Of a DNA stretch of 51,123 bases, positions 17,536 to 44,215 are shown piece by piece (positions within the stretch are counted from its first letter, which is position 1; each line of letters opens with the position of its first letter). The notes under the pieces were generated by a model. The model saw nothing but the letters and a program-made list of their open reading frames with translations, ran no database searches and had not been told where the DNA came from. Origin of the DNA: Octopus bimaculoides (taxonomy: Eukaryota); assembly GCF_001194135.2 (NCBI RefSeq), contig NC_068984.1, positions 58,397,490 to 58,448,612 of the forward strand. Reading direction: 5' to 3'. The translations under genes and the position numbers were made by a program.

Positions 17536-18036
17536 GTCAGGATTCTTTTTTTTTGGTTTGATGTCGGTATTGAAGGGATTACCAGACACCGGACAATACA
17601 GTGAGAGCAGCTTTCACTAACATCGTGGTATTCGATGCTGTGTACGTGTCTGTCGTGGTAAAATATGCCACTCCTTAACTGTCGCTTTGCCTTCATCCGT
17701 AGCACGAGGTAATTATAAATGTCATTATCTGTGAAATTCGGCAACTTACAAAGATCTTTAGTCCAATCTGCTGAAAGCAGATTGGGATCAGGCAATACTT
17801 CACCGAGAGGAGATATAAGCTTCTGCTTATTCCTGTCTGAAGTATCGTCCCATACTTCAGACTTATCGTCCGATGAATTTACTTTGTTGACATTCTTCTT
17901 CGACAGAATTTTTATACTTTTCAATCAAGTCCGCCTTTCTTCCAGTAACATACTGTCCATATAATCTTAAATATTTCTTTAACTCAGGCACAGTAAGTAC
18001 TTCGATAGCTGAATCATCGAACTGCTTTATATCCAT
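17536..18036 (-). pseudogene. Frameshifted ORF: N-terminal SAP motif plus a region resembling the SWIM/YqaJ-type second ORF of ISL2EU/Kolobok-like DNA transposons
   Basis: ATG at 18036: MDIKQFDDSAIEVLTVPELKKYLRLYGQYVTGRKADLIEK (SAP-like). After a frameshift near 17915: WTKDLCKLPNFTDNDIYNYLV...CIVRCLVIPS, running into the gap. Family call is from motif recall only. Confidence 0.55.
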
Positions 18037-20584: not shown

Positions 20585-21145
20585 TTAAAGAGTGAGTTCA
20601 TACAATAGAAGTCAGCCTTTCAGTCTCATTCAAAACTAAAAATCATTTTATTTATGTTGCTAATGTTGCTAGGAATTGCATACACATGGCTTGCTTTTTT
20701 TGCTAACAAATCTCAGGCTATATTCAAATGTAAGAAAAAATATATTATTTTCCAATTTCAGTCAGTACTAAGCAAGCAAGGAAATAATTTCTTAGTAGAT
20801 TCAATTAAAAAGTGTCATATTATGACACTTTTTAAACTTTCTTTTGTTACCATATTTTCATTGAAAAATAGTTTTTGTTTCAATTAATTTTGGAAATAAT
20901 GAAGAATTTAGGTGTTTGAAATATAAATTAACATGAAATTTTGATGGAAGGTTTTTAGATCACTTTAACCATTTATTTGCCTGACTTAAGTATTTTCATA
21001 AGTTTCTCTTAAACATTTATTCTTGTTTTACGACTTTTAGTTAGCCCTTGTTCCATACATTCTGAATAATATAAAACTTTCCTTTCATAAGTCCCAAGTT
21101 ACTCTGGCAAGTGAGAAAAAAAAAGGAAATGTTTATCATATATAT

Positions 21146-21413
21146 CGTTGCCAGTGCCCCTGGACTGGCTTGTGCGGGTGGCACATAAAAGACACCATTT
21201 CGAGCGTGGCCGTTTTCGTGCGGGTGACACGTAAAAGCACCCACTACACTCTCTGAGTGGTTGGCGTTAGGAAGGGCATCCAGCTGTAGAAACTCTGCCA
21301 AATCAGACTGGAGCCTGGTGTTGCCATCCGGTTTCACCAGTCCTCAGTCAAATCGTCCAACCCATGCTAGCATGGAAAGCGGACGTTAAACGATGATGAT
21401 GATGATGATGATG
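21146..21413 (+). mobile_element. Young (GAT)n-tailed retroposon-like repeat
   Basis: CpG-rich; ends GCATGGAAAGCGGACGTTAAACG(ATG)n; 207/210 identical to the inverted copy at 28459-28668. Confidence 0.9.
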
Positions 21414-21421
21414 GTACATGG

Positions 21422-21661
21422 TTGACGCGGTGAGCTGGCAGAAACGTTACCATGCCGGGCGAAATGCTTAGCGGTATTTCGTCTGCCGTTACGTTCTGAG
21501 TTCAAATTCCGCCGAGGTCGATTTTGCCTTTCATCCTTTCGGGGTTGATAAATTAAGTACCAGTTACGCACTGGGGTCGATATAATCGACTTAATCTCTT
21601 TGTTTGTCTTTGTTTGTCCCCTCTATGTTTAGCCCCTTGTGGGAAATAAAGAAATAAATAT
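21422..21661 (+). mobile_element. Full-length Nin/Deu-domain-like SINE with 11-bp TSD
   Basis: tRNA-like head; core GCCTTTCATCCTTTCGGGGTTGATAAATTAAGTACCAG; A-rich tail; ATGGTACATGG at 21411-21421 and 21662-21672. Confidence 0.9.
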
Positions 21662-25951: not shown

Positions 25952-26104
25952 TTAATGCCCTGTACCATTCACATATGAACTCTGCCCAACAAGCTGAAGA
26001 TTTTGTACATGGGTGTACATTTTCAGTGCTGGACCTAATTTCAATGACAGACCTGTTAGGACATCACTTCTTTTCATCAACAGGAGAGATTTGCCGTCAA
26101 TCTC
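25952..26104 (-). CDS. Terminal coding exon: C-terminal half of the SAM domain
   Basis: ttttcag|[50 protein letters not shown]; closely resembles SAMD1 [30 protein letters not shown] as recalled. Confidence 0.95.
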
Positions 26105-28423
26105 CTGAAAAATAAATGACAAAATGATAAAAATGATAAATATATTTACAAATTGCAGTGGCTGATATAAAAATACCTTTATATTTCCAGAAAATATTAA
26201 CCTAAACATTTAAAATAACCAATAAATAACCAATAACATTTAAAATAACTGGAAGTTCCTATGGGACAACTTGTTAAGAGCCTTGGACCATGCCAGTCCT
26301 AGGGTGATGTGGTGGAGGAATAGGGTAGTTGACAGGGCCATTAGAGCCAAGAAACATGCTTGGAAGGACTGGAAATGTGGTGGTAGCAAGAAGTTATATT
26401 AGGCAGCTGGAAGGGAAGCTAGGAAGCAGGTATACTTAACCAGAAGTGAAGCAAAAAGGAAGAAGTTTGGCAATGTCTTACAGCATGAGGACGAGAGCCT
26501 TAAAGTGTTTTGGCTTGCAAGACAGTGTGCTAGGGAAAATGTGATGTGGGAGAGAAGTGTGTTTGCATGGATGATAGTTCACTTGCAGCTTTTGTCAGTT
26601 ATTGCATTCTTTAGTCACGAATCATTACTAATCAAGCAGATCAAAAGCAATCCAGTCAAGACCATCCCATCTATTTAGATATCTGGGATATGTAGTCCTT
26701 TGTGTTTTTAAGATAGTGGCATGTGAGCTGAGAGAGAGAGAGAGATTAGGCTGCTATTTCTAGCAAGTAATTGGCTTGTTCTATACCTTTTACCTTTGAC
26801 TTGTTTCAGTCATTGAACTGCAGTCATACTGGGGCACTACCTTGCAGTGTTTAATTGAACAAATCAAACCCAGTACTTTTCTTTATATAAAGTTTGGTAC
26901 TTATTTTATTGGTCTCTTTTGCCAAACTGTTAAGTTACAGGGATGCAAACAAACCCACACTGATTGTCAAGTGGTGGGTAACAAAAACACTCTCATAAGG
27001 TTTTGGTTAACTTGGGACTGTTGTAGAAGACACTGGGACAAGATGTCATGCAATGGAACTGAACTCAAGGCCACATATTTGGGATGGAAGCTTCTTAACC
27101 ATAGTCATGCCTGCACATATAATTAGCATTATTATTATATATTTGTATATAGTCATAAAAGTATCGTTGATTTTTCTGTAAAAGAACCTGGAATTGAACT
27201 TACCTGTTCACGAAAAGCTTCTGCTTGTGTTACAAAGCCAGCAGATTTAAAGAAATTCACAACATCATCAATACTCCAATTTGCAGCATCAGGATAGGGA
27301 CCTTGAAAGTCTCGTAACATTGGTAATGAGACAGGTTCTTCTTTAACACTGAAATCAGTTAAATAAAACAGACTCAAAATGATCTAAGTGAATTAGATGA
27401 GGCATCAACACTTTCAACATCAACATAATTTAATGAAATCAACTCAAATATAAACATTCAGTTTAGATAGGAATTGCATTAATAAAAGAACTTGAAACAA
27501 TCTCAAATTCAATGCATGTTAATATCTTCCTTTTCTCTGTTTTTAACGTCCACTTTTCCATGCTTGCATGGGGAAGACAGAATTTTGTTGAGGCAGATTT
27601 TCTATGACCAGGTGCCCTTCTTGTTGTCAACCCTCACCTGTTTCCAAGAACAGTAATATATCTCCAGGCATGTTTTCATGGAAGATCGGAAATGAAGAAC
27701 ATAGTTTACATGCCAGTAACATTCGTTTACAACTATCACACAATGTCAAGGCAAGAAGACAGTAACACACACACACACACACACAGAGGTTTCTTTCAGA
27801 TTTCATCTGCCAAATCCACTCCCATGGCTTTAGTCAGCTTAAGGCTATGGAAGATACTTATCCAAGGTGTCAAGCAGTAAGTGGTTGGGAAGCAAACTTC
27901 TTAATACACAGCTTAGAACAACATTATCCAATATATTCTTCTATATCTTTTTTTTTTAATGGTAGAGGGTTTATTTGAGGAAGGTTTGTCAGCAAGTTAT
28001 ACTTGGTCTAACACCCAAATAGAATTGCTTCAATGATGGAGAGGAGTGATTAAGGTAATGATGATGATATTTTGTCTTATGTGAAATGGCACTTATAATC
28101 TTTCATACTATAAACATGCTTTGTAAACCCTGCTTTGAAAACCATATGAAAGTAAACTAAATGCATTTAAAATATCAAATATGTTAAACTTACCATGGTT
28201 TGTCCTCAGGTTCAGGTTGAGCTGGAGAATCTTGAGGAGTTGGAAGACCTGGTGGGCTTGTTGTTTCCATGTTGTCCCGATGGTTGCCTAAAGTATGATG
28301 AGTATGATGATGTAAAAATTATTTTCATTATACACAACAGCTTTTGAGGAGATAGTAAGAAATATAAATTAGATGGAATTTATTGAAACGATTTCAAGTT
28401 GATAACAGACCATATATATATAT

Positions 28424-28459
<36 letters not shown>

Positions 28460-31400
28460 GTTTAACGTCCGCTTTCCATGCTAGCATGGGTTGGACGATT
28501 TGACTGAGGACTGGTGAAACTGGATGGCAACACCAGGCTCCAATCTAATTTGGCAGAGTTTCTACAGCTGGATGCCCTTCCTAACGCCAACCACTCAGAG
28601 AGTGTAGTGGGTGCTTTTACGTGTCACCCGCACGAAAACGGCCACGCTCGAAATGGTGTCTTTTATGTNNNNNNNNNNNNNNNNNNNNNNNNNNNNNNNN
28701 NNNNNNNNNNNNNNNNNNNNNNNNNNNNNNNNNNNNNNNNNNNNNNNNNNNNNNNNNNNNNNNNNNNNNNNNNNNNNNNNNNNNNNNNNNNNNNNNNNNN
28801 NNNNNNNNNNNNNNNNNNNNNNNNNNNNNNNNNNNNNNNNNNNNNNNNNNNNNNNNNNNNNNNNNNNNNNNNNNNNNNNNNNNNNNNNNNNNNNNNNNNN
28901 NNNNNNNNNNNNNNNNNNNNNNNNNNNNNNNNNNNNNNNNNNNNNNNNNNNNNNNNNNNNNNNNNNNNNNNNNNNNNNNNNNNNNNNNNNNNNNNNNNNN
29001 NNNNNNNNNNNNNNNNNNNNNNNNNNNNNNNNNNNNNNNNNNNNNNNNNNNNNNNNNNNNNNNNNNNNNNNNNNNNNNNNNNNNNNNNNNNNNNNNNNNN
29101 NNNNNNNNNNNNNNNNNNNNNNNNNNNNNNNNNNNNNNNNNNNNNNNNNNNNNNNNNNNNNNNNNNNNNNNNNNNNNNNNNNNNNNNNNNNNNNNNNNNN
29201 NNNNNNNNNNNNNNNNNNNNNNNNNNNNNNNNNNNNNNNNNNNNNNNNNNNNNNNNNNNNNNNNNNNNNNNNNNNNNNNNNNNNNNNNNNNNNNNNNNNN
29301 NNNNNNNNNNNNNNNNNNNNNNNNNNNNNNNNNNNNNNNNNNNNNNNNNNNNNNNNNNNNNNNNNNNNNNNNNNNNNNNNNNNNNNNNNNNNNNNNNNNA
29401 TGGTAGCAGGGCGTGTTAGAAATAGCAGCCAAATCTTTGGAGGTGAGATATGTTGAATGCACTCAAAAAAAAAAAAACTACGGAAAAAAATTATTTCACA
29501 CCAAGTTTATGGCCTTTTACGAAATATTTACCGTATTTTTAAAGTCATTTTCACTTTAAAATATTTTAAAAATATGCCAAAAAAATTTTGTAATGGTATT
29601 CACTTGAAAATAATTTAAAAAGACATTAAAATATTGTCTGTTTAAAGAAAGCTAAAATATAAATACTTACTGTCCAAACAACTTACATTTTTGGAATCAC
29701 ATTCACTTAAAAATTGTGTTTAACAAAGGCGAAAATAGAAACATTTACTGTAAAAAACAAATTGTATTTTTTCGTTGTCAAGTCTCTGTGACTAATCAAA
29801 AGGCAAGAGTTTCTTCCCTTTCAGGATGAAGTTAATTTCAGAGAATTTTCCTATTATGCACAATGTTGGGTATTTATACCCCGAAAACCTGGCCACTTGT
29901 CTGATTGTCTGGTTTTATTCCATTCATATTTACATTTCAGAGGAAACTTAATTCATAGTATTTTCTCATTATGCACCAGTTTGGCTGGGTAAAATTGCAA
30001 GCAAGCAAGCTGGTTTTTAATATATTATAGATATATCCATATTAAATATTTTAACAAAATTTCCTCCTAATTCTCATGTTACATATTTTGTGTTATCATT
30101 ATTTATTGATTTAAAAGGATCTGCAGACTGGCAGAATTGTCTAGCAATAGACTACAACATAGTGTTTTGTTACAACCCTTTCCATTCTGTAAAATTTTCC
30201 CAGAATCAATTTGCTTAGTATCCTTTTGGAGTAGTCAAAGTAAACACGAGGTAATTATTGAGGTTGATATAATTGACTATGCCCTACTATACTTTACCTC
30301 GAATATTTTGCAACCTTAGAAACCATTATTATTTAATGTCAACAAAGAGCATCATTATTAGCACTATTTACATCACTCAAACTTAGATCTTTGAATTTGC
30401 TTGTGCTATAATCCTGACAATACTCTCCAGGCTCTCTTTTAACTGCAAGTAGGCATCAGAGAGTAAAAAAGGAGTTCTATTTTAAAGGTAGGATATGAAA
30501 AAACATATTTTATATGAGCAAATGAAGGAACCTCTATGTAGTCGTTTACTAGAAATAAGAGCCAAATTTTCCTTAAATTATATCTTAGTGTTTTTAGAGA
30601 GGATGAGTATTAAGGATGTGATTATAAATGCATTGTATCTATAAATAAGACAGGATAGTCATAGCTGCAATGTGTTTGATGATAGATTTGATTGATCAAG
30701 GTGAGCTGGAGCTAAACAGTGACTACCATCATATTTTATAATATTGATTGAACATGTATATCTTTATATATATTTCTGAGAGGAGGAACTTTTCAGATTA
30801 TGTATTATGTTCTAAGTTGATTTTACCTTACATAAATTCTGAGATTGATAAAATAAGTACCATTCAAGTAACAGAATTGCTACAATCAACTTTTCCTTTC
30901 ACCCAAATTTGAGGCTTTGTGCCTATGAAACAAATCAACATTATCCATTATAATAAACCTTAATTCCAGTTAGAAATACATCTATTTTCAGACGTAATAT
31001 TCCCACTATTAATGGGTAAAATAAATGTTAATGTTATTGTTAATGATGTAGTTAGCCCCATATTAGCACATATTGAACAGATCTATAATCAAAGATCAGA
31101 TGAAACCATTCCTTCTTTTTGAATGTCATTGACTATACTGTCTGATATATCTAAGCTTCTTCATTTAAGATAGTAGGATGTGAATTCGGATGCTATTGAT
31201 GTGAATTTGGCTGTTATTACTAGCAAATCAAACGACTGAACAGTGACACTATCGATGGCTCTTAGAAGCAATATATGTTATCCAATAGTATAGATTTATG
31301 AGAAAGTCAAAAATCTTATCGACCATGATGTATATAATGTATAGACTTTAGAAAATTGAATGTTGAAGTAACTAGTACAGTAATTTATCACTGACTTACA

Positions 31401-34400
31401 AGATATAAAAATAAATCATTTACTTTATTAGATATTGTGAATATAAATCACCATTATACATATTGATTTCTTACATTGGCACAATGCCACAAACATAAGA
31501 AAACAGTGTAGGTAGTCAAATCAACTGCCTAGTACTTGATAGTTTTCACTCTAGTGGGATGGAAGTCAAAGGGGATCTTATCAGGATTTGTAAAAGGATA
31601 AAACTAAATATCATCAAGAATTTGTCTGACATTTTCTCCACTTTAAAATCCTCAGTATGTATTAACTATTGATTTCCTATTTGGGCAAATGACCAATTGC
31701 TGAAAGTGTAGAAGTGGGTGAAAATCAATTTAATATCACTATATTACTATTATATATATTTTTCTGTCCTCTATCCAAAGGCAACGGAAAACAGACTCAG
31801 CCCTAGCAAAATTTGAACATAGAGAAACAAATCAAATGTTACAAGCACTGAGGGAGCCTTCATATAGTCATTAGAAATAACAGCCAAATTTCCTCAACTC
31901 CTAGAGATAGAGATGAACAGTTAGACAAAGGTATATAGGAAAGAATCACTACTTGAGTTTGTTGTTTGACACAAAGTATTTATAGGAAGTAATTGAAAAT
32001 TATTACCATTGGTGGTTGGCATTGAGGTCTCTTCTGGAGTTGCGGTTTCGAATTCCATTGGCTGAGGTAGACAATTTTCACTTTCTGATGCACATTGACC
32101 ACACACCCACTTTCCTGCAATAAAAACAATCAACTTGGAGATTAATATAAAGAAGTTTCTGCCCTCTTTCATGTAAAACTCTCTCCCTCTCTCTCTCTGA
32201 CTGAGTAACCATGTACCTTCTCTACAGCAAGACAACTGCTTCTGTCTCACTGTCACACTCTAACCATTCCTCATCAGACACAAAATCACCTCCTCCAATG
32301 CCCCCTCCCCTCTCAAAAGTTCCTTGCCTTACAAAGTTATTTGGTGACCCTGCCAGTGCAGGTGTCACTTAAAAAGCATGCAATCCACACTCTAAAGTGG
32401 TTGGCATTTGGAAGGGCATCCAGCTGTACAAGCCATTGACCTTACCTATGTTGGTGCCACATTAAAAGCACTCAGCTCACTCTCTGGAGTGGTTGGTGTT
32501 AGAAAGGGTATCCAGCCATAAAAAAAACATGCCAAAACAGACACAGAAGTCTGGTACAATCTTCTGCCTGACCAACTCCAGTCAAACCATTCAACCCATG
32601 CCAGCATGGAAGAAGGATGTTAAATGCTGATGATGATGATGGAGTATAGCAAAACTGCCGAAACCTAAATTAGAGAAAAGTACTTTTTTTCACATTGAAG
32701 TGTTCTGAATGGTTCAGAGCATGTGCAGAAGAAAAGAGCGATAGTTATGCTCAGTTATATNNNNNNNNNNNNNNNNNNNNNNNNNNNNNNNNNNNNNNNN
32801 NNNNNNNNNNNNNNNNNNNNNNNNNNNNNNNNNNNNNNNNNNNNNNNNNNNNNNNNNNNNNNNNNNNNNNNNNNNNNNNNNNNNNNNNNNNNNNNNNNNN
32901 NNNNNNNNNNNNNNNNNNNNNNNNNNNNNNNNNNNNNNNNNNNNNNNNNNNNNNNNNNNNNNNNNNNNNNNNNNNNNNNNNNNNNNNNNNNNNNNNNNNN
33001 NNNNNNNNNNNNNNNNNNNNNNNNNNNNNNNNNNNNNNNNNNNNNNNNNNNNNNNNNNNNNNNNNNNNNNNNNNNNNNNNNNNNNNNNNNNNNNNNNNGT
33101 ATGTGTGCACGCTCGTATGTGTGCACGCACTTATGTGTTCATGCTTATATGTAAGTATGTGCGTCCATATGTGTGTTTGTAACAATATCGTTCATATCAG
33201 ATAAGATAGAGACTTTGGACTTGGTTTTGGTTTCCTTTCTGTTATTTTCTGTTTTCTTCGTAAAAGCATCTTTTTTATTTACGTTCACATTCTGTATTTT
33301 ATGTGTGAACAACGTCTAAAACCATGGGGTAATTGTAAGGCTTTTATCTACGTGTAATTGCTATTCAAAATTGGTCGTGTTTCCGTTATGAGGACTGACT
33401 CTTGTATTTGCCGTAGCGATGCTTTACCGGGGTGTCTAGACAGGATTTCTATGCTAATCCAGTCCAGTACACCACCATGTTGTTCTTTGGCATGCTGGTA
33501 TAGCACCGAGGTTTGTTTGTGATTCTTATAGTCCCGCCAATGTTTACTTACACGCTCAGCCAAACTTCTTGCCATTTCACCTATGTATGCCGTGTTTCCG
33601 TTTTTACAATCACCATCCATACAGCTTATTTTGTAAACCACATTTCTGGCTTTGCAGTTGATACCAGGACTATATTTGCACACAATGCAATTCTCAATGC
33701 GAGAAGTTTGGCTGAGCGTGTAAGTGAACATTGGACCATTTTTATGATACCCTTCTACAGGCTACCACAAAGACAAGTGGCAATGACCTCATCTTTGCGG
33801 CTGGAGATTTTAATGGGCATGTTGGACAGCAATCCAGTATCTTCACTGGTGTATACAGGAGCCATGGTATTGGTTCCCGAAATGAAGAGGGAACTAGGCT
33901 ACTGGAGTTCTGTGATGCATGTAGCTTAGCCAAATTCAATGAAGAATTTAGGAGGAACGAGTGGTATGGGATAACATAAAATCAGCAAGTTCAGCAGAAC
34001 ATTGGAGTAAGGGGATGTTTGTTTGGGGATTTTGCAGAGAAGAGGGATGCACTATTTATTCCTCTTTTAGGTATGTTGCTGGTGCAATACTTCAATCACC
34101 ATTCGTTTCAGTTATCTGCTGGAGTTATGTCATGGACAGAATCTGATTATGTCTGAGTGGAGTGTTGTTTGGCTGATGTGATCAGAAGATCAAATTTGTA
34201 TGTATAAACATATACAAGTACCTAAGAACATACATAGGTTAATGTCTAAGCATATGTTTGCACATTTACTTGCATGGACCAAGTTCTTAGCCCTTTGTTG
34301 GTCTTCTGTTGCATATAATTTCTAAAGCTTTTGTTTTGTTTCAAAGTAACTATCAGGAATCAATCCTTTTACATTAGTAATTGTTCCATTATTCTAGGTT

Positions 34401-34558
34401 TCAGATCATAATCTTATATTCTCATACTGCCTTCTGTCTATGTAAACCTTCAAACAAAACAGATTATAATGCTTACCTTTTGGTTTCTCATTCACACGTG
34501 GAAGATGGCATTTCATGTGATATCCTTTATCACAGGCATCGCAAAATAACATGCAGTC
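25952..34558 (-). CDS. SAMD1: Partial spliced gene: KAT6/DPF-type PHD finger plus SAMD1/SAMD13 (atherin)-like SAM-domain chromatin protein (5 coding exons, 193 aa, 5' part missing)
   Basis: Exons of 82+108+94+145+153 = 582 nt join with consistent phases 1,1,2,0 and no internal stop; all introns are GT-AG. The symbol is a family-level call from the SAM domain; orthology not tested. Confidence 0.85.
26270..26585 (+). mobile_element. RTE LINE fragment (EN-RT linker), intronic
   Basis: Degenerate [22 protein letters not shown]...EKCV motif. Confidence 0.7.
26790..26995 (-). mobile_element. Decayed SINE, intronic
   Basis: TTGTTTCAGTCATTGAACTGCAGTCATACTGGGGCAC...AAGTTACAGGGATG; inverted homologue of the 10545 family. 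Confidence 0.7.
27204..27348 (-). CDS. Coding exon: N-terminal half of the SAM domain
   Basis: atttcag|(C)[48 protein letters not shown]|gtaagt; phase 0 into the terminal exon. Confidence 0.95.
27535..27650 (-). mobile_element. Old (GAT)n-tail family fragment
   Basis: TTTTAACGTCCACTTTTCCATGCTTGCATGGG...AGGTGCCCTTC. Confidence 0.6.
27787..27913 (-). mobile_element. tRNA-derived SINE, intronic
   Basis: TTTCTTTCAGATTTCATCTGCCAAATCCACT...GGTTGGGAAGCAAACTTCTTA; inverted homologue of 4936-5095. Confidence 0.75.
28194..28287 (-). CDS. Coding exon: Pro/Ser/Thr-rich linker
   Basis: ctttag|(G)[32 protein letters not shown]|gtaagt; phase 1 in and phase 2 out, matching both neighbours. Confidence 0.88.
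28425..28668 (-). mobile_element. Young (GAT)n-tailed retroposon-like repeat, intronic, running into a gap
   Basis: Reverse complement of 21183-21413 with 3 substitutions in the 210-bp core. Confidence 0.9.
32007..32114 (-). CDS. Coding exon: end of the PHD finger plus linker
   Basis: ttattgcag|(G)[36 protein letters not shown]|gtaata; W-x-C-x2-C completes the PHD. Confidence 0.9.
32340..32640 (+). mobile_element. Old (GAT)n-tailed retroposon-like repeat
   Basis: GTGGTTGGCATTTGGAAGGGCATCCAGCTG twice; ends GCATGGAAGAAGGATGTTAAATGCTGATGATG. Confidence 0.75.
33348..33695 (-). mobile_element. Penelope-like element GIY-YIG endonuclease remnant
   Basis: NVVYKISC...[16 protein letters not shown]...[11 protein letters not shown]...[17 protein letters not shown], the GIY-YIG pattern typical of Penelope-like elements. 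Confidence 0.85.
33735..33930 (+). mobile_element. RTE LINE apurinic endonuclease fragment
   Basis: [29 protein letters not shown]...[16 protein letters not shown] (GDFN motif). Confidence 0.88.
34477..34558 (-). CDS. Coding exon: core of a DPF/KAT6-type second PHD finger
   Basis: ttttctag|[28 protein letters not shown]|gtaagc; resembles KAT6A [28 protein letters not shown] as recalled. Confidence 0.93.
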
Positions 34559-34669
34559 CTAGAAAACATACAATAAATCCATTATAGTTCTGATAGAGAA
34601 TATTTACAACTGTTAATATCAAACATATAAACTCATACAGTTGATTCTAGTTAGTACTTAGATGGGTGA

Positions 34670-35618
34670 CACCAGCATTGAAAACAAATCTAGGTCAGGA
34701 AGCCCTTCTGTTGTGAAAGATGAGGCCTTGCTTGAAATGGTTGAATAACAGCCAAGCACAAGCACTTGTACATTGTCAGTAGAAGTCGGTCCTTTATGAA
34801 GCACTATCAATCAACATCTCCATAAACTTGGCTTTGAGAACAGATACTGTTGAGAAGCACCCAATGAACTGTCCAATGACTAGGCTCAACAACATGTAAA
34901 CATTTGCAAACAACTGCTGGCAGTTCCTCAAGATTCCCTGTTTTTGGTATAGCATTATGACTGGGGATGAAAAATGGATCTATTTTCATAATCTTAATAA
35001 AAGAAATCAGCGACATTGTTCTGGTGAGGCTTCAGAACCTGTTCTCAAACAAGGTGGGTTGAACAGGTCGTGCTTTGAGTTTGGTGGAATTTCAGTGGGG
35101 TGTTGTACTTTGAGTTTGTCGCAGACGGTCATGCAATGAATGCTAACCATTATGCTCAACAACTGCAGTGAGTATATGAGGCTTTGAAAGCCCACTAAAT
35201 GGCATTGTTCAATCAAAGATGTGCACTCCTATAGCATGACAATGTTCCAAGCACATATTGCCAATGTGAACAAGTGCAGACTTAAGGAACTTGAGGGCTG
35301 CAAGTGCTGCCTCACCCTGCCTACAGTCCAAGCTTTGCACTATCATATTACCCCTTTCCTGAGCCATGGCTCACTTACTGCACAGACAGAAATTCAATAA
35401 TATGGATAAGGTTGAAAATGGTTGCAGAGAATTTTTTGCTTCTAAACCAGCCAAATGGTATGGTATAAGCATGGGCTTGAGCTTTTGGTACAATGATGGC
35501 AACAGACAATAAAATATAATAGGATATATTTTTGATGAATAAATGCTTTTTGTATGTAATTTATCTGAACTATTAATTAAAGTTTGAAATAGAAAAAATC
35601 TTTTGATTCAACATGATA
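34670..35618 (+). pseudogene. Mariner transposase remnant with 3' TIR, intronic
   Basis: MTGDEKWIYFHN, WWNFSGVLYFEFV, LL*HDNVP, VLPHPAYSPSFA and EFFASKP; TIR-like TTTTGATTCAACATGA-TA. Confidence 0.9.
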
Positions 35619-35920
35619 CAATTATATACAATGAATTTCTGCAGTTTCCAACAACTAAATTTTACTGACAACTGACAAAGTTTTGGCCAATGCTATGTGG
35701 TAGAAGATATATGCTCATCTGTCATATGGCTGTGAAATGAACCTGCTAATCAGACAACCATGTCTGCACCTACAAGTATATGTCATCCTTGTTTTAAAAA
35801 AATCAATGGTTTATCTGTCTCACATGTCCATTGCAATGAATATTTTTACTGTCTCACAACAGACACAATTTTGTATAATGTAATATACTATGCAGTATAA
35901 CAGGTGCAAATATAACTATA

Positions 35921-36085
35921 GGAGCAGGTGTGACTATGTGGATAAGAAGCTTGCTTCCCAACCACGTGCTCAAGAGTTCAGTCCCACTGTGCAGCACCTT
36001 GGGAAAATGTCTTCTAGTAAAGCCCCAGGGCAACAAAATTCATGTGAGTGGAATTGGTAGATGGAAACTGAAAGAAGCCCATCAT
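35921..36085 (+). mobile_element. tRNA-derived SINE with (TA)n tail
   Basis: Homologous to 4936-5095. Confidence 0.85.
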
Positions 36086-36124
36086 ATTCATATATGTATA
36101 TATATGTATATATATATATGTATA

Positions 36125-36165
<41 letters not shown>

Positions 36166-38039
36166 NNNNNNNNNNNNNNNNNNNNNNNNNNNNNNNNNNN
36201 NNNNNNNNNNNNNNNNNNNNNNNNNNNNNNNNNNNNNNNNNNNNNNNNNNNNNNNNNNNNNNNNNNNNNNNNNNNNNNNNNNNNNNNNNNNNNNNNNNNN
36301 NNNNNNNNNNNNNNNNNNNNNNNNNNNNNNNNNNNNNNNNNNNNNNNNNNNNNNNNNNNNNNNNNNNNNNNNNNNNNNNNNNNNNNNNNNNNNNNNNNNN
36401 NNNNNNNNNNNNNNNNNNNNNNNNNNNNNNNNNNNNNNNNNNNNNNNNNNNNNNNNNNNNNNNNNNNNNNNNNNNNNNNNNNNNNNNNNNNNNNNNNNNN
36501 NNNNNNNNNNNNNNNNNNNNNNNNNNNNNNNNNNNNNNNNNNNNNNNNNNNNNNNNNNNNNNNNNNNNNNNNNNNNNNNNNNNNNNNNNNNNNNNNNNNN
36601 NNNNNNNNNNNNNNNNNNNNNNNNNNNNNNNNNNNNNNNNNNNNNNNNNNNNNNNNNNNNNNNNNNNNNNNNNNNNNNNNNNNNNNNNNNNNNNNNNNNN
36701 NNNNNNNNNNNNNNNNNNNNNNNNNNNNNNNNNNNNNNNNNNNNNNNNNNNNNNNNNNNNNNNNNNNNNNNNNNNNNNNNNNNNNNNNNNNNNNNNNNNN
36801 NNNNNNNNNNNNNNNNNNNNNNNNNNNNNNNNNNNNNNNNNNNNNNNNNNNNNNNNNNNNNNNNNNNNNNNNNNNNNNNNNNNNNNNNNNTATATATATG
36901 TATATATATATATGTATATGTATGTATGCTTGTCTAGACATCACACAATAGTTGTAAATGGGCATCATCATCATCATGCATGTCATTTATTTCCAATCTG
37001 CCATGGAAAACATATTGTTTGGAAAACAAATGAGGGTTGATGACAGAAAGGGTATCCAGCCATAAAAGTCTCCTGCTACAAATTCTGTTTGACCCTTACA
37101 TGCATGGTAGAGTAGATGTCAAATGATGATGATGATATATATATAATTTTGTGAATAAAAATACAATCAACTAACAATGTATTACACTAGGAAAATACAA
37201 GAGAGCTTCTTTCTTACAAAATTACAATGCTCCATAATTCATCTGTAATAGCATTACATCTAAAAACATTTGGAATGATTATTTAACTCCAGATTTAGAT
37301 TGATATTAGATAATGTATTATTTTCTTCCATCCTTGTGGAGTATCAGAGTGTATGGGTATGGTGATCAGAAGAATAACAATGAACTCTACCTCTCAAGAA
37401 GGTTAGCCATTTAGTATGAACTTATAAAGAGAAAGAAGCCATACAATTCCATTTCAAATACCTAAGGACAATTATTTTGTATTATTAGGAAATTTTTGAA
37501 ATAAACACAAACATTATCCAAAATGCATCTTGTGAGTATTCCTGGCATTTTGCCACCAGCTCTATCCTGCTGTCTCCCATTCACTCTCATTCTCCTGCAC
37601 TTCCCTCAGGTTGGGTAGCCATGTATTTCCTTTGTGGTAGCGCACCTGTTTCTGTTTTCTTTCCTGATCTCTCTCTCCGGCTGGGTAACCTTGTATTTCT
37701 TCTACAGCAGGACACCTGTTTTTGTCTCTCTGTCTCACTATAACTTTTCATCATCCAATACAAGATCACCTCCTTCAATGTTCTCTCTCCTTTTGAAGTT
37801 TTTTTTTTTTTTTTTTTTTTTTGTCTTGCCAGTACTTGGTGACCCTGTCAGTGCAGATGCCACTTAAAAGTGCCCAGTCCACATTGTAAAGATGGTGATG
37901 ATACTGTAGTTCTAGATACATTCTAAAAAGATAAAATAGTCACAGTTCCAGTGACATTGGTCATAGATACACTCACTCAAGGTTAAACATCAACCAACTA
38001 AAAGGCTTTACAGAATCACACATCACTCATTTGTTCATT

Positions 38040-38205
38040 CATTCACTTTGTATCACCTTTTTTCATGCTTGCATGGGTTTGCATGGAAATTCAAGCTCCA
38101 GTGACTACTTCATCATGGTTTTTATGACTGGATGCCCTACCTAATGCCAACCACTTTACAGCATGCACTGGGGCTCTTTATGTGCTACCAGCTCTAGTGA
38201 GATCA
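38040..38205 (-). mobile_element. Old (GAT)n-tail family fragment
   Basis: CATGCTTGCATGGGTTT...GACTGGATGCCCTACCTAATGCCAACCACT. Confidence 0.6.
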
Positions 38206-38351
38206 CCATGCAGATTGCAAAATTACAAACCCCAAATGGATGGGAATTGACTTTATGATAGGAGGTGAGGGGTTGAATTATGAGAGAGGAGACAGGCCAG
38301 ATTCTTGTTGTAGAGAAGCTTCATCATTACTTCCATTTAGAAGAGAAGCTA

Positions 38352-38397
<46 letters not shown>

Positions 38398-39269
38398 NNN
38401 NNNNNNNNNNNNNNNNNNNNNNNNNNNNNNNNNNNNNNNNNNNNNNNNNNNNNNNNNNNNNNNNNNNNNNNNNNNNNNNNNNNNNNNNNNNNNNNNNNNN
38501 NNNNNNNNNNNNNNNNNNNNNNNNNNNNNNNNNNNNNNNNNNNNNNNNNNNNNNNNNNNNNNNNNNNNNNNNNNNNNNNNNNNNNNNNNNNNNNNNNNNN
38601 NNNNNNNNNNNNNNNNNNNNNNNNNNNNNNNNNNNNNNNNNNNNNNNNNNNNNNNNNNNNNNNNNNNNNNNNNNNNNNNNNNNNNNNNNNNNNNNNNNNN
38701 NNNNNNNNNNNNNNNNNNNNNNNNNNNNNNNNNNNNNNNNNNNNNNNNNNNNNNNNNNNNNNNNNNNNNNNNNNNNNNNNNNNNNNNNNNNNNNNNNNNN
38801 NNNNNNNNNNNNNNNNNNNNNNNNNNNNNNNNNNNNNNNNNNATGTTCATATGATGATATCTCCACAATGTGTTGATGAGAAAAACATGTAATCGCGACC
38901 AATTTAGCAAGAGATTTCTCTGCAAAGGTCTAAAGTAGACTCCTTATGGATCGATCTCCTTGGTTATATATATATATATAAAACAAGTTTACAATATAAG
39001 AAAATTTCTGGATTTTGATCATTTTATCAACATTTAAAGAGATAATGAGAAAAAATAAAAAGAACCTCCGTTGGATTTCATCTCATAACGAGAATATCAT
39101 ATTTTGAATATTGTACAGAGTTTGTTTAATTGATGGTCCTGTTGTTCACCACAAATCTAATCCAAATAAGAACATCAAGTGAAACTGCTGAAATTTAATT
39201 CTTTTCTTCTACAAAGAAAAAATAAGCTGTTTTTTACCCTTATTCTTTCATGATGGACAGCACTTTAAT

Positions 39270-39740
39270 TCCATACTAATATCACAATTACCTGCATCAT
39301 CACAAACACCACTATCATCATTACCATCCACTTCACAACATCACCATAACCAAGAGCTAATTTCACCACCATGTCTACCACCAAAATTAACACTATCACC
39401 TTTCTCACAGGACCAATCCTACAATAACCATGATAAACACCACCACATTGACAATAACAACAACAATTATTCCAACACCATGAAAACACTCATGACTACC
39501 ACCACCATCACCCTGTCAACACTGCTTGACCTGCATAAAAGACAAAGAAAGGGCACATTGGATAAATTAGTCCTAGATATACAAAGACATGGATGGACAT
39601 GATTGGACTTCCTTTGATCATAGGTCTAGAAGATCAGAGTTGACCATAGGCTAAACAGCAGCTTCAACAACAACACTACCATCAACTTCACTATCACCAT
39701 CGTCATCACCGCCACAATCATCACCTCTCCCACTCCCACC
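39270..39740. repeat. Degenerate (CAC/CAT/CAA)n low-complexity tract with an embedded SINE fragment
   Basis: Read directly; 39540-39660 resembles the 11560 family. Confidence 0.7.
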
Positions 39741-40226
39741 ACAACAGGACAAAGTAAAATGCATATGATTAGGTAAAATGTGAAGTGGGTGGGTGGGGNN
39801 NNNNNNNNNNNNNNNNNNNNNNNNNNNNNNNNNNNNNNNNNNNNNNNNNNNNNNNNNNNNNNNNNNNNNNNNNNNNNNNNNNNNNNNNNNNNNNNNNNNN
39901 NNNNNNNNNNNNNNNNNNNNNNNNNNNNNNNNNNNNNNNNNNNNNNNNNNNNNNNNNNNNNNNNNNNNNNNNNNNNNNNNNNNNNNNNNNNNNNNNNNNN
40001 NNNNNNNNNNNNNNNNNNNNNNNNNNNNNNNNNNNNNNNNNNNAACAGGTAACTAACAAAGACCTGCTGCTCCCTCTGCTACAGAAACCCTGTCCCAAAG
40101 CAATTTCTGACTGACTAATAATGAATGACAAGTAATCAATGTTACTAATGCTTTTCAATAAATGGTGGTGGCTTAAATGTTCTGTCGTTTATTGTCACTT
40201 CCATAATATGTCTCTGTAAATCATGA

Positions 40227-40260
<34 letters not shown>

Positions 40261-40934
40261 CTGGGTGTATGTGCATGTGTGTGTATGTATAACTAACCAA
40301 ATAGTGTGTGTTATACAAAATCAAATTGGAAAAGAATATACAACAAAGAACTGCTTTCATAGATATACATCGGTATATACATACATACAAACACACACAC
40401 ACATGTATGCACACTTGCACATATACACAAATACACATGTGTGGGTGAGTAAATGTAAATATATATGAATGCATGTATGTATATATGATGTGTGCATGCG
40501 TACTCAGACACATAAGAATAACCAGGTTTAGTTTGGAAGTGTGTCTCTGTACATGTGTTTTTATTGATGCTTCTTTGGTGAGCCAATGCGTATGTATTAA
40601 CTGGTCATAAAATGCTTTGTTAGTCAGTAAAGTTAATCACAATTCGTCTCTATCCTACACAATCCACCAGCAACGATACATTAGAATAAATCTAATTATG
40701 TCCTATCCTTACAGATTTTACTCACGAGAGAGAATTTTGTTTGAAGAGTGTACTATTTCAATTTTACCATGCTAGAGCCATTTCACTATTGAAAAGCTGC
40801 CTCTATACATTTATAAATATTCATTATATGGTATATTGTTTACAAAACCATTAACCACAGTTGATTGTCTTGTACACAATCCTTCAACTCTTCTATTTTA
40901 ATTAGATTAATCATGGATCTCTTATTCTTTTATT

Positions 40935-41135
40935 TGTTTAAGTCATTTGACTACGGCCATGCTGGCGCATTGTTTTTTAGTCGAAGAAATCGACCCCAGG
41001 ACTTATTCTTTGTAAGCCTGGTTCTTTTTTCTATTGTTTTTTTTTACCAAACTGGTAAGTTACAGGGACATCAGACGCACCAACATCAGTTGCCAAGCAA
41101 TGGCAGCAGGGACAAACACAGATACACACATTGCA
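40935..41135 (-). mobile_element. SINE 3' portion, intronic, CpG-decayed
   Basis: Reverse-complement homologue of 10545-10762. Confidence 0.85.
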
Positions 41136-41282
41136 AAGATAATCTGGAACTTGACTGAGGAAAGAAAACTCCGAATGACCTGTCCTTGTTTTCTTTGTAA
41201 TGTCTATCTGGATGTTTTTTTGTCCCTTTTTTGTATCACCTAACTGTCTGGATGTTTTGTGTTCTTGTCCAATTTTGTATTT

Positions 41283-41360
<78 letters not shown>

Positions 41361-41365
41361 CATAC

Positions 41366-41500
41366 ACAATGGGCTTCTTTCAGTTTCCATCTACCAAATC
41401 CACTTACAAGGCTTTGGTCAGCCTGAGGCTACAGTCAAAGACACTTGCCCAAGGTGCCATGCAGGTTGGAAAGCAAGCTCTTTACCACACAGCCACACTT
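41366..41500 (-). mobile_element. tRNA-derived SINE, intronic
   Basis: GGGCTTCTTTCAGTTTCCATCTACCAAATCC...CACTTGCCCAAGGTGCC...ACCACACAGCCAC. Confidence 0.85.
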
Positions 41501-42055
41501 GTAACTTATATTAATTTAAAGCACATAACATACATGGTTAAAGTGAATCCTAAACAAGTTTGGGTTTAAAAGCTATAGTTCTGACAGTGTGGCTTTCTTA
41601 TATTATTTATTAAAGAAGTTACAAACAATTAGGCAAAACACAAAACTTACAAAATTAAAAGAGGTTGTTCTCATCAAAAAGTTACCAACTTAAAAGGATA
41701 TGAAAAAAATTCTTTAAATACTAAGAAAGAAAATCAGGAATATTTTTATTTACCAGTTATAAAAATCTAAAACACATCAAAGTTAAAACTAAAAGATTGA
41801 ACACTTAAAGCAACTTAGCAAATAGCTATTTTAGAAAAATGAAACTATCAGAAAACCAATCCTTTTCCAGATTTAAACATTGAATGTACAATTTAAGTGA
41901 ATGTAAGGTAAAAGATTATATTCAATGAAATAAAAATTATATTATAAAATGTGGAAAAGTCTATCCCAAAGGAAAATGCAAAACCATATTTACTAACATC
42001 TTATTTTTAGAAACAAAATTACTTCTACCAGAACCCTCTCATTAGAATACCTTAA

Positions 42056-42275
42056 CTCTTTAGCATTCAGATTACTTTGTCAAATGTAATGATTATTTAT
42101 TCACATTCTTTAAAGTTAGAACTGTGTTGTCTTGCAGCTTTAAGATTTCAAAGTTATGACTGTTTATTTTTAGAATGACATTGCAGGGTATGTGTGAGAG
42201 ACCGAATCTGGTCAGTTTGAAGATAAAACAGGTAGAATATTTGGGCCAGATATGGCCATTTTAAATGCTAAAGGT
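42056..42275 (-). mobile_element. piggyBac-type MITE
   Basis: TTAA-CTCTTTAGCATT...AATGCTAAAGGT-TTAA. Confidence 0.85.
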
Positions 42276-42689
42276 TTAAATTTGATTATTTGATTTCAGA
42301 ACAAAGAACAAAAATAGTTAAATTAATATCTGTGAAATTGGAAATTCAACATCGTATTTCAATTTACATTAAGCTGAAATCAGTACATTTAAACCAACTC
42401 ATATAGGTTAGCATTAATTTTAACATGATATCCCAGCATGGCCAACGCCATGTGGCTGAAACCAAAAAGAAGCAAAAAGATTATCAAAGATTTCCATCTT
42501 ATATTCATAGCCTTAAGTTCACGTATAGCAATGTAGATGCTATAGGTTAGCTTTACCTATGCCAGGATACATGGTGATGCTTTGTTACTCAAAATACTAT
42601 ATATTCTTTTTAAAATTATAATACAACTGAATATAAATGATGCATGCATATTAATAGAATTTCCTCTCATATGACCCAATCCTAAAATG

Positions 42690-44215
42690 GAATTAAAATG
42701 GTTCCCATGAGAACAGATCAACATTACTGCAGATCCTTACCCTTAGAAGAATCATAGAGGATATCAGAATCTCCAAGTACAAAAAACATCAATTGTATTT
42801 GTGGATTTCTTCAAGGCATTTGACAGTGTCAACAGGAGAGTACATACTGTTTTGAAATATGGTATCTCAGATGATATGGTCAAAGCCATCACCACTATGT
42901 ATAAAAACTCATCAAGGTCTGTGTAAAGCATAAATGATCCAAGAGGAATACCCCAGGGAGACTCTAGCTCCTTTTCATTTTATGATTGTAAGTGGACCAC
43001 ATCATTAGTCAATGTTTTGATCCAATCCAAAGATCTCATCATCAAGCTGAAGCAATCAAAACAACAGCAGAGCTTGTATCTCTGATAGGGATTATGTTGA
43101 TGATTTTCCCCTCATGGCTCATCAACCATGTAATGCACAAGACTTGTGAATATTCCTTGAGAATACTGCAACTAAAGTTGGCCTGTTTCTCAATACAAAG
43201 ATGACAGGATACATGGCCATCAATGAAAATGAAAGTCAGCTGCCAATTTGTTTGAACGATGGCATCTAACTCAAGAGAGTCAAAAATTTCAAATACCTTG
43301 ATCTTTTGCAACCAATCTGCCTGAGACTACCCCTGGTTCTATGGTACAGACTCCTTGTTTTAACCCTTTAGCATTTAAACTGGCCATATCCGACCCAAAT
43401 ATTCTACCTCCTTTATGTTCAAACTGGTCAGATCCAGCCTCTCATACCTATCTGACAATGTCATTCTTAAAATAAACAGTCACATCATTGAAATCTTAAA
43501 GCAATGAGATAAAGGATGATGAACTCAAAAGAATGTGAATAAATATGTATTACATTTGACAGAATAATGTTAATGCTAAAGGGTTAATGGGATCTAAATT
43601 AACACTTCCATAAAAAAATTTCTTGCTAATTTATGTTCTGAATATTAGCTTAACAATGACAGTTATTTTACAAAATTCTTCATTATTTTCAAAATTAATT
43701 GAAACAAAATCAGTGTAATTCAGAGATATGGCAACAAAAGGGTTCAATCCTATGTTGCTGAAAGTACTGTAAGAAAGACTTCCTGACATGTAAGGGATAA
43801 GCCTGGGGTACTTGCAACAAACTTCTGAATATCTAGGAATCAAACAGCACAAAGTCAATAAGACCTGGTCTTCTTCAGGGCATGTGTAGAGAACATTCTT
43901 CTCTATGGAGTTGAAACCTGAACTTTGATGAAGGAGCTTCAAAATCAAATTAAACCAAAAATGAGATTTATGGGTACATTCTACCCATCCCTACTATTTT
44001 TGTTCAATGCAAGGTAGTATTTGCTGACCATTGCTTAAATACTGAACAAAACAAACCATAATTTGATGCCATACTTTGGAAACTTCCACACCCTGAGAGA
44101 AGATGAAGACCACTAAACTCCCTTGATGTTGTTGGCAGAGAAACATAACATGAAACTAAGGACCTACCAAAGTTAATGGGGGGACTAAGATTCCTGGTGT
44201 ATCGTGGCAAAATAC
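42690..44215 (+). pseudogene. RTE/RTEX-type LINE RT remnant, interrupted by a piggyBac MITE
   Basis: VFVDFFKAFDSVNR, QGD-TLAPF, DYVDD, VGLFLNTK, RVKNFKYL and FFRACVENILLYGVET*TL; many lesions. Confidence 0.88.
43364..43583 (+). mobile_element. piggyBac-type MITE, best-preserved copy
   Basis: TTAA-CCCTTTAGCATT...AATGCTAAAGGG-TTAA: perfect 12-bp TIR and TTAA TSD. Confidence 0.92.

What the first reader, a model, noticed from the sequence alone, without database searches (positions are those of the whole stretch)
25952..34558. KAT6/DPF-type PHD finger and SAMD1-type SAM domain in one protein
Seen: the spliced product is [18 protein letters not shown]...GKWVCGQC, a linker of about 90 aa, then the SAM domain. 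Established: vertebrate SAMD1 is winged-helix (binds unmethylated CpG) plus polymerising SAM, without PHDs; SAMD13 is essentially SAM only; KAT6A/B share the SAMD1-like winged helix and carry a double PHD reading acylated H3K14, but have a MYST domain and no SAM. Inference: this gene may keep a WH-DPF-SAM architecture linking the two families, i.e. a histone-reading, self-polymerising repressor-like protein. I cannot tell whether this architecture is already described in invertebrates.
Basis: partly seen in the sequence, partly recalled or inferred. Interest (0 to 1): 0.75.

Follow-up and report, generated by a model that had tools for sequence, protein, structure and literature searches.

The report
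Octopus SAMD1/Lint-O-family gene, 3' half

Summary
Five minus-strand exons (34558-34477, 32114-32007, 28287-28194, 27348-27204, 26104-25952) have canonical AG/GT borders. They join in frame to 193 codons plus a stop. They encode the second half of a PHD finger, an 82-aa linker with a conserved LPTPxDSP motif, and a complete SAM domain. Both flagged gaps lie inside introns, and a spliced transcript from a relative is colinear, so no exon is missing there.

The SAM is SAMD1-type (PDB 6LUK, E 1e-22), and all 14 SAMD1 polymer-interface residues are identical. The full double PHD finger of the closest relative matches KAT6B/KAT6A best (E 1e-28).

That relative's full-length protein (940 aa) also carries an N-terminal SAMD1-type winged helix. 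The WH, PHD1 and first half of PHD2 exons are not in this window.

Drosophila Lint-O (two PHDs plus SAM, an L(3)mbt co-repressor) is the studied member. Shark SAMD13 keeps a decayed PHD relic. The likely function is a SAM-polymerising repressor adaptor for L(3)mbt-type proteins that binds CpG and reads the H3 tail. Verdict: a new member of a known kind, of moderate interest.

The parts
34477..34558 (-). Exon encoding the middle of PHD finger 2 ([28 protein letters not shown]). It contains the two Asp of the CDxCD 'acidic pocket 1' and the Zn ligands C-x2-C and H-x2-C. It is the first exon of this gene visible in the window.
   Evidence: Acceptor TTTTCTAG, donor GTAAGC. tblastn against P0382 residues 745-773 gives 86% identity, E 6e-13. 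The alignment to KAT6A/B '[13 protein letters not shown]' is. The two conserved Asp are described in PMC8538644.
32007..32114 (-). Exon encoding the end of PHD2 (KWVCGQC, the last Zn pair) and the start of the linker.
   Evidence: Acceptor TTATTGCAG, donor GTAATA. The phase joins G|GA to the previous exon. tblastn E 3e-9 against P0382 residues 772-810.
28194..28287 (-). Linker exon with the conserved LPTPxDSP motif ([17 protein letters not shown]).
   Evidence: Acceptor ACTTTAG, donor GTAAGT, in phase with both neighbours. The motif is conserved from annelids and arthropods to shark SAMD13 (alignment A1).
27204..27348 (-). Exon with the SLPML motif and the first half of the SAM domain ([26 protein letters not shown]).
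   Evidence: Acceptor GATTTCAG, donor GTAAGT. tblastn E 7e-23 against P0382. The SLPML stretch also aligns with mammalian SAMD13.
25952..26104 (-). Last coding exon: the second half of the SAM domain ([37 protein letters not shown]), a short tail and the TAA stop (25954-25952).
   Evidence: Acceptor TTTTTCAG. 98% identical to P0382 residues 890-940, E 5e-26. All 14 SAMD1 ML/EH interface residues are identical (Q486 I488 D489 S492 L495 M496 R498 D500 L502 L505 L509 G510 L513 K514; residue list from PMC8115922, alignment).
28669..29399 (.). Assembly gap inside the intron between the linker exon and the second PHD exon.
   Evidence: The orthologous mRNA has no extra residues at this junction.
32761..33098 (.). 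Assembly gap inside the intron between the two PHD exons.
   Evidence: KPKG|KWVC is contiguous in P0382 and in all relatives.

Best explanation
The window carries the 3' part (last five exons, 193 codons) of an octopod gene of the SAMD1/SAMD13/Lint-O family. The full-length product is inferred from the orthologous 940-aa transcript. Its order is: N-terminal SAMD1-type winged helix, small helical (H15-like) domain, double PHD finger of the KAT6/DPF type, linker with an LPTPxDSP motif, and a C-terminal SAMD1-type SAM domain.

Most likely mode of action, by analogy with studied relatives and therefore inferred:
- The WH binds unmethylated CpG-containing DNA.
- The DPF docks on the unmodified H3 N-terminus and possibly acylated H3K14.
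- The SAM self-associates head-to-tail and binds the SAM of an L(3)mbt/L3MBTL3-type protein.

The protein would thus nucleate or stabilise a repressive L(3)mbt-type complex on chromatin.

Shown here: the exon structure, the reading frame, the domain identities, purifying selection, and the family-wide architecture.

Inferred: that this locus has the 5' exons, and every biochemical activity.
For: Gene structure and frame.

SAM: best PDB match is SAMD1/Atherin (E 1e-22) against Polyhomeotic at 8e-12. All 14 SAMD1 polymer-interface residues are identical.

DPF: the orthologue's DPF matches KAT6B/KAT6A at about 1e-28, then DPF2, DPF3 and PHF10. The acidic-pocket Asp pair lies in the window's own exon.

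Orthologue P0382 is WH + 2 PHD + SAM. Its WH matches the SAMD1 WH at 2e-19 against KAT6A WH1 at 2e-4. Eight of nine SAMD1 DNA-contact residues are conserved.

Family: roughly a hundred representatives cover the DPF-SAM profile end to end, typically 430-620 aa. Named examples come from Cnidaria to Cephalochordata, with Pfam SAMD1_WH + PHD + SAM.

Orthology and constraint: the window and P0382 group with 100% bootstrap support. Vertebrate SAMD1 and SAMD13 form a clade at 75%. dN/dS is 0.11 or lower.

Function of relatives: Lint-O binds L(3)mbt through SAM-SAM contact and co-represses germline genes (PMC9535798). SAMD1 needs both WH and SAM for chromatin binding and recruits L3MBTL3 and KDM1A (PMC8115922).
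Against: - No exon for the WH, SHD, PHD1 or first half of PHD2 was found in the 16.5 kb upstream of the PHD exon. They must lie beyond position 51123 or in one of four upstream gaps, so the full architecture is not demonstrated for this locus.
- There is no cDNA from the source species. The supporting transcripts come from an unnamed relative at about 80% nucleotide identity.
- In Lint-O, mutating eight PHD cysteines did not abolish repression, although deleting the PHDs abolished L(3)mbt binding. Zinc-dependent histone reading may therefore not be essential.
- In the cephalopod orthologue the aromatic 'wall' of the acyl-lysine pocket (F in KAT6 CSFC; F or Y in most family members) is Thr (CVTC). 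K14-acyl reading may be weakened in this particular gene.
- I could not compare with the D. melanogaster Lint-O sequence directly.
Confidence: 0.85

Rival explanations
1. This locus is a truncated or partial copy. Only the 3' exons exist here, giving at most a short product (half a PHD plus SAM, or SAM only, like tetrapod SAMD13), and the WH and DPF belong only to relatives.
For: No upstream exon was found in 16.5 kb. Short models are common: P0380 (194 aa, starting at MLFCDAC) occurs on 10 Logan contigs. Vertebrate SAMD13 is mostly SAM-only. L001 has an in-frame stop upstream of the DPF.
Against: The first visible exon opens at a splice acceptor in the middle of a PHD finger, so it needs an upstream exon. 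The PHD part is under purifying selection, dN/dS 0.11. In the O. sinensis paralogue the equivalent upstream intron is 10.6 kb and the preceding exon only 111 nt, small enough to hide in a gap. The short Logan models are explained by ORF callers starting at the first Met of partial contigs. The 5' end of L001 looks like retained intron ending in ttatcag.
Confidence: 0.08
2. The PHD exons and the SAM exons belong to two different neighbouring genes or transcripts.
For: No transcript from the source species is available. Two assembly gaps separate the exons.
Against: All four junctions are in phase with canonical splice sites. The linker exons are conserved. A spliced transcript from a relative runs through all five exons. 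Hundreds of homologues in many phyla have a PHD and a SAM in one ORF.
Confidence: 0.03
3. It is a KAT6 (MOZ/MORF/Enok) histone acetyltransferase gene or a fragment of one, as the automatic NCBI names of relatives ('KAT6B-like') suggest.
For: The DPF matches KAT6A/B best. The WH-WH2-DPF order is shared with KAT6 (PMC9881136).
Against: The ORF continues from the PHD through a linker into a SAM and a stop codon, and no MYST domain follows. No full-length relative has a MYST Pfam hit. The WH is far closer to SAMD1 than to KAT6A, 72 against 25 bits.
Confidence: 0.01

Closest known systems
Drosophila Lint-O (CG2662), L(3)mbt co-repressor (PMC9535798)
   Same: Two PHD fingers followed by a C-terminal SAM. 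The SAM is of the SAMD13/SAMD1 type, and the paper names SAMD13 as the BLAST orthologue. Insect relatives (beetles, wasp, moths, mosquito, Bradysia) were retrieved with the family profile.
   Different: Lint-O is 446 aa and is described without a winged helix. The cephalopod orthologue is 940 aa with an N-terminal SAMD1-type WH, an SHD and long low-complexity spacers. The Lint-O sequence itself was not available for direct comparison.
Vertebrate SAMD13
   Same: SAM domain 69-75% identical over about 63 aa. The SLPML stretch is shared with mammals. Shark long isoforms have WH + SHD + LPTPSASP motif + SAM in the same order.
   Different: SAMD13 has no functional PHD. Sharks keep a recognisable PHD2 relic with the Zn ligands lost (BLASTP E 7e-8 over the internal region). 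Tetrapod and teleost proteins are SAM-only, about 100-170 aa.
Vertebrate SAMD1 (Atherin)
   Same: WH (orthologue against 6LUI, E 2e-19), small helical domain, and polymerising SAM (window against 6LUK, E 1e-22, all interface residues identical). SAMD1 has a repressor role with L3MBTL3 and KDM1A.
   Different: SAMD1 has no PHD fingers. It has a Pro/Ala-rich disordered region in place of the DPF and linker. It is described in the literature as vertebrate-specific (PMC8115922).
KAT6A/KAT6B (MOZ/MORF), Drosophila Enok
   Same: The N-terminal half is colinear: SAMD1-like WH1, H15-like WH2, then a DPF. The DPF is the best structural-database match, 103 bits.
   Different: KAT6 continues into a MYST acetyltransferase domain and long C-terminal regions and has no SAM. 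Its WH1 is much more distant, 25 bits.
DPF1-3 (BAF45) and PHF10
   Same: DPF-type tandem PHD, 81-93 bits.
   Different: These are subunits of BAF/PBAF with Requiem/C2H2 or SAY domains. They have no WH of the SAMD1 type and no SAM.

Membership tests
SAMD1/SAMD13/Lint-O family (WH-SHD-DPF-SAM) | C-terminal SAM domain of the SAMD1 type with an intact ML/EH interface | tested here: met
   The window SAM against 6LUK/6LUJ gives E 1e-22; the next family (Ph) gives 8e-12. 14 of 14 interface residues are identical. SAMD13 hits are 69-75% identical.
SAMD1/SAMD13/Lint-O family (WH-SHD-DPF-SAM) | Double PHD finger (DPF) upstream of the SAM in the same ORF | tested here: inconclusive
   The window encodes only the last 35 residues of PHD2, in frame with the SAM. 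That fragment alone does not discriminate between PHD types. The orthologue P0382/L001 has the complete DPF.
SAMD1/SAMD13/Lint-O family (WH-SHD-DPF-SAM) | Conserved linker motif (C)LPTPxxSP between the PHD and the SAM | tested here: met
   GLPTPQDSP is encoded at 28194-28287. The motif is conserved in A1 from annelids and arthropods to shark SAMD13.
SAMD1/SAMD13/Lint-O family (WH-SHD-DPF-SAM) | N-terminal SAMD1-type winged helix (PF21524) | tested here: inconclusive
   The WH was not found in the window. It is present in the orthologue P0382 (6.6e-26), in the Octopus paralogue P0385, and in many phyla.
SAMD1/SAMD13/Lint-O family (WH-SHD-DPF-SAM) | SAM-dependent binding to L(3)mbt/L3MBTL3 and co-repression | not testable with these tools
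   This is known only for Lint-O and for SAMD1.
SAMD1/SAMD13/Lint-O family (WH-SHD-DPF-SAM) | Direct sequence similarity to D. melanogaster Lint-O | not tested
The link rests on shared architecture, dipteran relatives (P0322, P0359) and the paper's statement about SAMD13.
KAT6 / MYST acetyltransferases | MYST catalytic domain C-terminal to the DPF | tested here: not met
   The ORF runs from the PHD through the linker into the SAM and a stop. There is no MYST hit in P0382, P0385, P0122, P0169 or P0190.
KAT6 / MYST acetyltransferases | DPF of the KAT6 type | tested here: met
   This was tested on the orthologue's DPF: KAT6B 103.1, KAT6A 102.9, DPF2 93.3, DPF3 89.3, PHF10 81.1 and KMT2C 57.4 bits.
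BAF45 (DPF1-3) / PHF10 | Requiem/C2H2 or SAY N-terminal region with a terminal DPF | tested here: not met
   The DPF is followed by a SAM. The N-terminus of the orthologue is a SAMD1_WH.

The most novel reading that the evidence does not exclude
The WH-SHD-DPF-SAM protein is the ancestral metazoan form from which vertebrate SAMD1 and SAMD13 both derive by loss of the DPF. Shark SAMD13 would be caught mid-decay, and at least dipteran relatives (by Pfam; Lint-O as published) lack the WH.

On this reading SAMD1 is not vertebrate-specific, and there is a seventh DPF-reader family beside MOZ, MORF, DPF1-3 and PHF10. That family couples CpG binding, H3-tail reading and SAM polymerisation to L(3)mbt-type repression.

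I found no paper stating this. The SAMD1 papers call SAMD1 vertebrate-specific, and the DPF review lists six proteins. The proteins themselves are in public databases.
Probability: 0.55. Interest if true: 0.5.

Novelty: new member of a known kind. Interest (0 to 1): 0.38.

Why it matters
For this window, the result is a clean annotation. It holds the conserved 3' half of an octopod SAMD1/Lint-O-family gene that appears to lack a correct public gene model: no identical protein was returned.

More broadly, the family ties together three separately studied chromatin regulators:
- SAMD1, a CpG-island repressor.
- Lint-O/SAMD13, partners of L(3)mbt/L3MBTL3.

If the ancestral protein combined a CpG-binding WH, an H3K14-acyl/H3K4me0-reading DPF and a polymerising SAM, invertebrate members could show how L(3)mbt-type repression is targeted. 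They could also show what vertebrate SAMD1 and SAMD13 lost with the DPF. The automatic names 'KAT6B-like', 'atherin-like', 'PHF10-like' and 'ubi-d4-like' given to these proteins are misleading and could be corrected.

Tried and rejected
- **Upstream exons.** I searched for them in 34559-51123 with regular expressions for PHD/WQC patterns on the minus strand. I also ran tblastn with ten full-length relatives and with P0382/P0385, at word size 2-3 and E up to 10. Nothing was found. A weak plus-strand hit at 49933-50040 (E 0.27) was rejected as chance.
- **PHD fragment alone.** I tried to classify the window's own PHD fragment. CHD4, DPF2, KAT6B, lid and KAT6A all fall within 4 bits of each other, so it is uninformative. 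The classification rests on the orthologue's complete DPF.
- **Lint-O by sequence.** I tried to retrieve D. melanogaster Lint-O with an insect profile and by length among the representatives. P0322 is 446 aa but turned out to be a mosquito protein. It was not obtained.
- **Octopus sinensis 'atherin-like' P0204/P0385.** I considered it as the window's own gene and rejected it. It is only 44-65% identical in PHD2 and SAM, so it is a paralogue.
- **NG86 dS for the SAM part.** It is saturated and undefined, so I report identities instead.
- **Intronic ORFs in Pfam.** GIY-YIG scores below its cut-off, and three other ORFs have no hit.
- **Structure prediction.** I did not run it, because the sequence matches to solved domains were already decisive.
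Full report
**What the window is.** The window is AT-rich (35% G+C) eukaryotic DNA with nine N gaps. It shares many SINE-like repeats, at 80-92% identity, with an Octopus sinensis locus (142 HSPs). The source is therefore an octopod. This is an inference from the repeats, not a named record.

**Checking the observation.** tblastn with the closest database relative, P0001, mapped five colinear exons with E-values from 1e-28 to 1e-4. The exact borders are:
- 34558-34477
- 32114-32007
- 28287-28194
- 27348-27204
- 26104-25952

Every acceptor is AG and every donor is GT, and the phases fit. The joined sequence is 582 nt, that is 193 codons plus TAA:

[193 protein letters not shown]

Pfam finds PHD (33.3 bits, cut-off 24) and SAM_1 (28.1 bits, cut-off 23). 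The linker is 82 aa.

**The gaps.** Both flagged gaps (28669-29399 and 32761-33098) are inside introns. The exons on either side join in frame. A spliced contig from a relative (L001, about 80% nucleotide identity) runs through all five exons with no extra residues at either junction. No exon is hidden there, and the order and orientation across the gaps are consistent.

**Selection.** Against that relative, the PHD part has dN/dS 0.11. The SAM part is 96.7% identical in protein at 79% nucleotide identity, with dS saturated. This is a constrained, functional coding sequence.

**Domain identities.**
- The window's SAM matches the solved SAMD1/Atherin SAM (6LUK) at E 1e-22. The next best matches are Polyhomeotic (8e-12), PHC3 and L3MBTL3.
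- The 14 residues that Stielow et al. list as forming the ML/EH polymer interface of SAMD1 are all identical in the window (PMC8115922; alignment).
- The PHD piece in the window is only the last 35 residues of a finger. On its own it scores about equally against CHD4, DPF2, KAT6B, lid and KAT6A.
- The complete tandem PHD of the orthologous transcript is clearly DPF-type: KAT6B 103 bits, KAT6A 103, DPF2 93, DPF3 89, PHF10 81. The best non-DPF tandem PHD scores 57.
- The two Asp of the DPF 'acidic pocket 1' (CDxCD) lie in the window's first exon (PMC8538644).

**The whole protein.** P0001 is a 229-aa ORF call on a partial transcript. The same 90% cluster holds P0382, 940 aa. P0382 has an N-terminal SAMD1_WH (Pfam 6.6e-26), long Ser/Thr/Asn-rich spacers, an H15-like helical region, KRGRP basic stretches, the DPF, the LPTPCDSP linker and the SAM. 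The window's 193 residues are 79% identical to P0382 residues 745-940, and the two group with 100% bootstrap support.

The WH of P0382 matches the SAMD1 WH (6LUI) at 2e-19 but KAT6A WH1 only at 2e-4. Eight of the nine SAMD1 DNA-contact residues are conserved (R43, R45, K46, R48, Y87, K88, S92, R94), with R56 changed to His.

None of the first 744 residues is encoded in the window. In the O. sinensis paralogue the corresponding upstream intron is 10.6 kb and the preceding exon is 111 nt. The missing exons may therefore lie beyond 51123 or inside one of the four upstream gaps.

**The family.** A profile of DPF-SAM proteins retrieves about 190 representatives at E below 1e-30. Most cover the profile end to end at their C-terminus and are 430-620 aa long. 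Named examples with Pfam SAMD1_WH + PHD + SAM include:
- chiton, scallop, oysters, mussels and limpet
- Lingula
- crinoids, a sea cucumber and a brittle star
- Ptychodera and amphioxus
- spiders, horseshoe crab and scorpion
- sea anemones

Ticks and a scorpion also have a THAP-DPF-SAM variant. Octopus has a second, divergent paralogue (P0385, 657 aa).

Shark 'SAMD13' long isoforms are WH + SHD + SAM. Between the SHD and the SAM lies a stretch that still aligns with PHD2 and the LPTP motif (BLASTP E 7e-8), but it has lost four of the six PHD2 zinc ligands that fall in the aligned stretch. In a small NJ tree of the SAM, vertebrate SAMD1 and SAMD13 form a clade (75%) and the invertebrate proteins fall outside it. 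This suggests the invertebrate proteins are co-orthologues of both vertebrate genes. The tree is short and weakly resolved.

**Literature.**
- Drosophila Lint-O (CG2662, 446 aa) is described as two PHD fingers plus a SAM. It binds L(3)mbt through SAM-SAM contact, is stabilised by it, co-occupies and co-represses germline/piRNA genes, and its loss gives sterility and brain tumours. SAMD13 is named as its BLAST orthologue lacking the PHDs (PMC9535798).
- CG2662 also appears among the SAM proteins found with Sfmbt (bioRxiv 2022.04.29.490092).
- SAMD1 binds unmethylated CpG through its WH, polymerises through its SAM, and recruits L3MBTL3 and KDM1A. It is called vertebrate-specific (PMC8115922).
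- The 'SAMD1-like WH' group is given as SAMD1, KAT6A, KAT6B and ZMYND11 (PMC9881136).
- A DPF review lists six DPF proteins, none of them SAM-linked (PMC8538644).

The short architecture (DPF-SAM) is therefore published, and the long one is in sequence databases under automatic names. In the papers I could search, I did not find the long form discussed as the bridge between SAMD1/SAMD13 and KAT6.

**How it most likely works (inferred).**
- The WH brings the protein to CpG-containing DNA.
- The DPF binds the H3 tail. The acidic pocket for R2 is conserved. The acyl-lysine pocket keeps W, L and I, but in the cephalopod orthologue the aromatic wall is Thr, so K14-acyl reading is uncertain.
- The SAM forms homo-oligomers and heterotypic contacts with an L(3)mbt-type SAM, giving multivalent, repressive chromatin binding.

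One fact counts against a strict need for histone reading. Lint-O with eight PHD cysteines mutated still repressed its targets, although deleting the PHDs abolished L(3)mbt binding.

**Verdict.** This is a new (octopod) member of a known family, with only the 3' half in the window. The evolutionary bridge is neat and perhaps not yet written up, but it can be read from public domain architectures. Interest is moderate.

Noticed in passing
window 34950-35520 (+), intron upstream of the PHD exon: A decayed mariner/Tc1-type transposase with several frameshifts and stops. It matches Pfam Transposase_1 (PF01359) at E 2.7e-11 and has the typical DEKWIYF and HDNxxxH stretches.
   Followed up: partly
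window 33348-33731 (-) and 33731-33979 (+), intron between the two PHD exons, next to gap 32761-33098: A 127-aa ORF with a weak GIY-YIG match (17 bits, below cut-off), possibly a remnant of a Penelope-like element. It abuts an 82-aa ORF that looks like a retroelement endonuclease fragment but has no Pfam hit.
   Followed up: partly
window 21145-21660 and 28432-28635 (inverted copies; the second abuts gap 28669): SINE-like repeats of about 200-230 bp, present many times in an Octopus sinensis locus (L002) at 85-92% identity. This places the window in an octopod and may explain why the assembly broke at 28669.
   Followed up: partly
L001 1-75 (Logan SRR19578112 contig): The 5' end of this otherwise spliced transcript carries an in-frame stop and ends in ttatcag just before ...RFKKTPGPEFE. 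P0382 reads KRKRFKKTPGPEFE at that point. This looks like a retained intron or an internal start, and it could hint at short DPF-SAM isoforms.
   Followed up: no
P0202, P0221, P0017, P0028, P0212 (shark and chimaera SAMD13): Cartilaginous-fish SAMD13 has long isoforms with SAMD1_WH + SHD and a decayed PHD2 relic (FLNCDTYKKSRGMNGH...DQWLYGEC) plus the CLPTPSASPV motif. This is a visible intermediate in the loss of the DPF.
   Followed up: partly
P0176, P0178, P0154, P0161, P0175 (ticks, scorpion): A variant architecture, THAP-DPF-SAM, in which a THAP zinc finger replaces the winged helix as the N-terminal DNA-binding module. The scorpion also has the WH form (P0137).
   Followed up: partly
L002 (O. 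sinensis CM016881.1:3832060-3878758); P0385, P0204: Octopus has a second, divergent paralogue (WH-DPF-SAM, 657 aa in O. vulgaris) with an odd insertion in the SAM (GLRDYICLGPALK). Exon borders around PHD2 and the SAM appear the same as in the window's gene. Bivalves (Sinanodonta, Tegillarca) and Lottia also have two copies, and some of these are adjacent genes.
   Followed up: partly
P0356 (beetle Diorhabda, 'polyhomeotic-like protein 2'): This model has SAMD1_WH + SHD and the family's SAM but skips most of the DPF. It shows that insects outside Diptera keep the winged helix, and that DPF-less splice forms or model errors exist.
   Followed up: no
window 16809-17924 (-), interrupted by gap 16846-17535: An ORF of at least 129 aa (…FTDNDIYNYLVLRMKAKRQLRSGIFYHDRHVHSIEYHDV…) with no Pfam hit. 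It is probably transposon-derived.
   Followed up: partly
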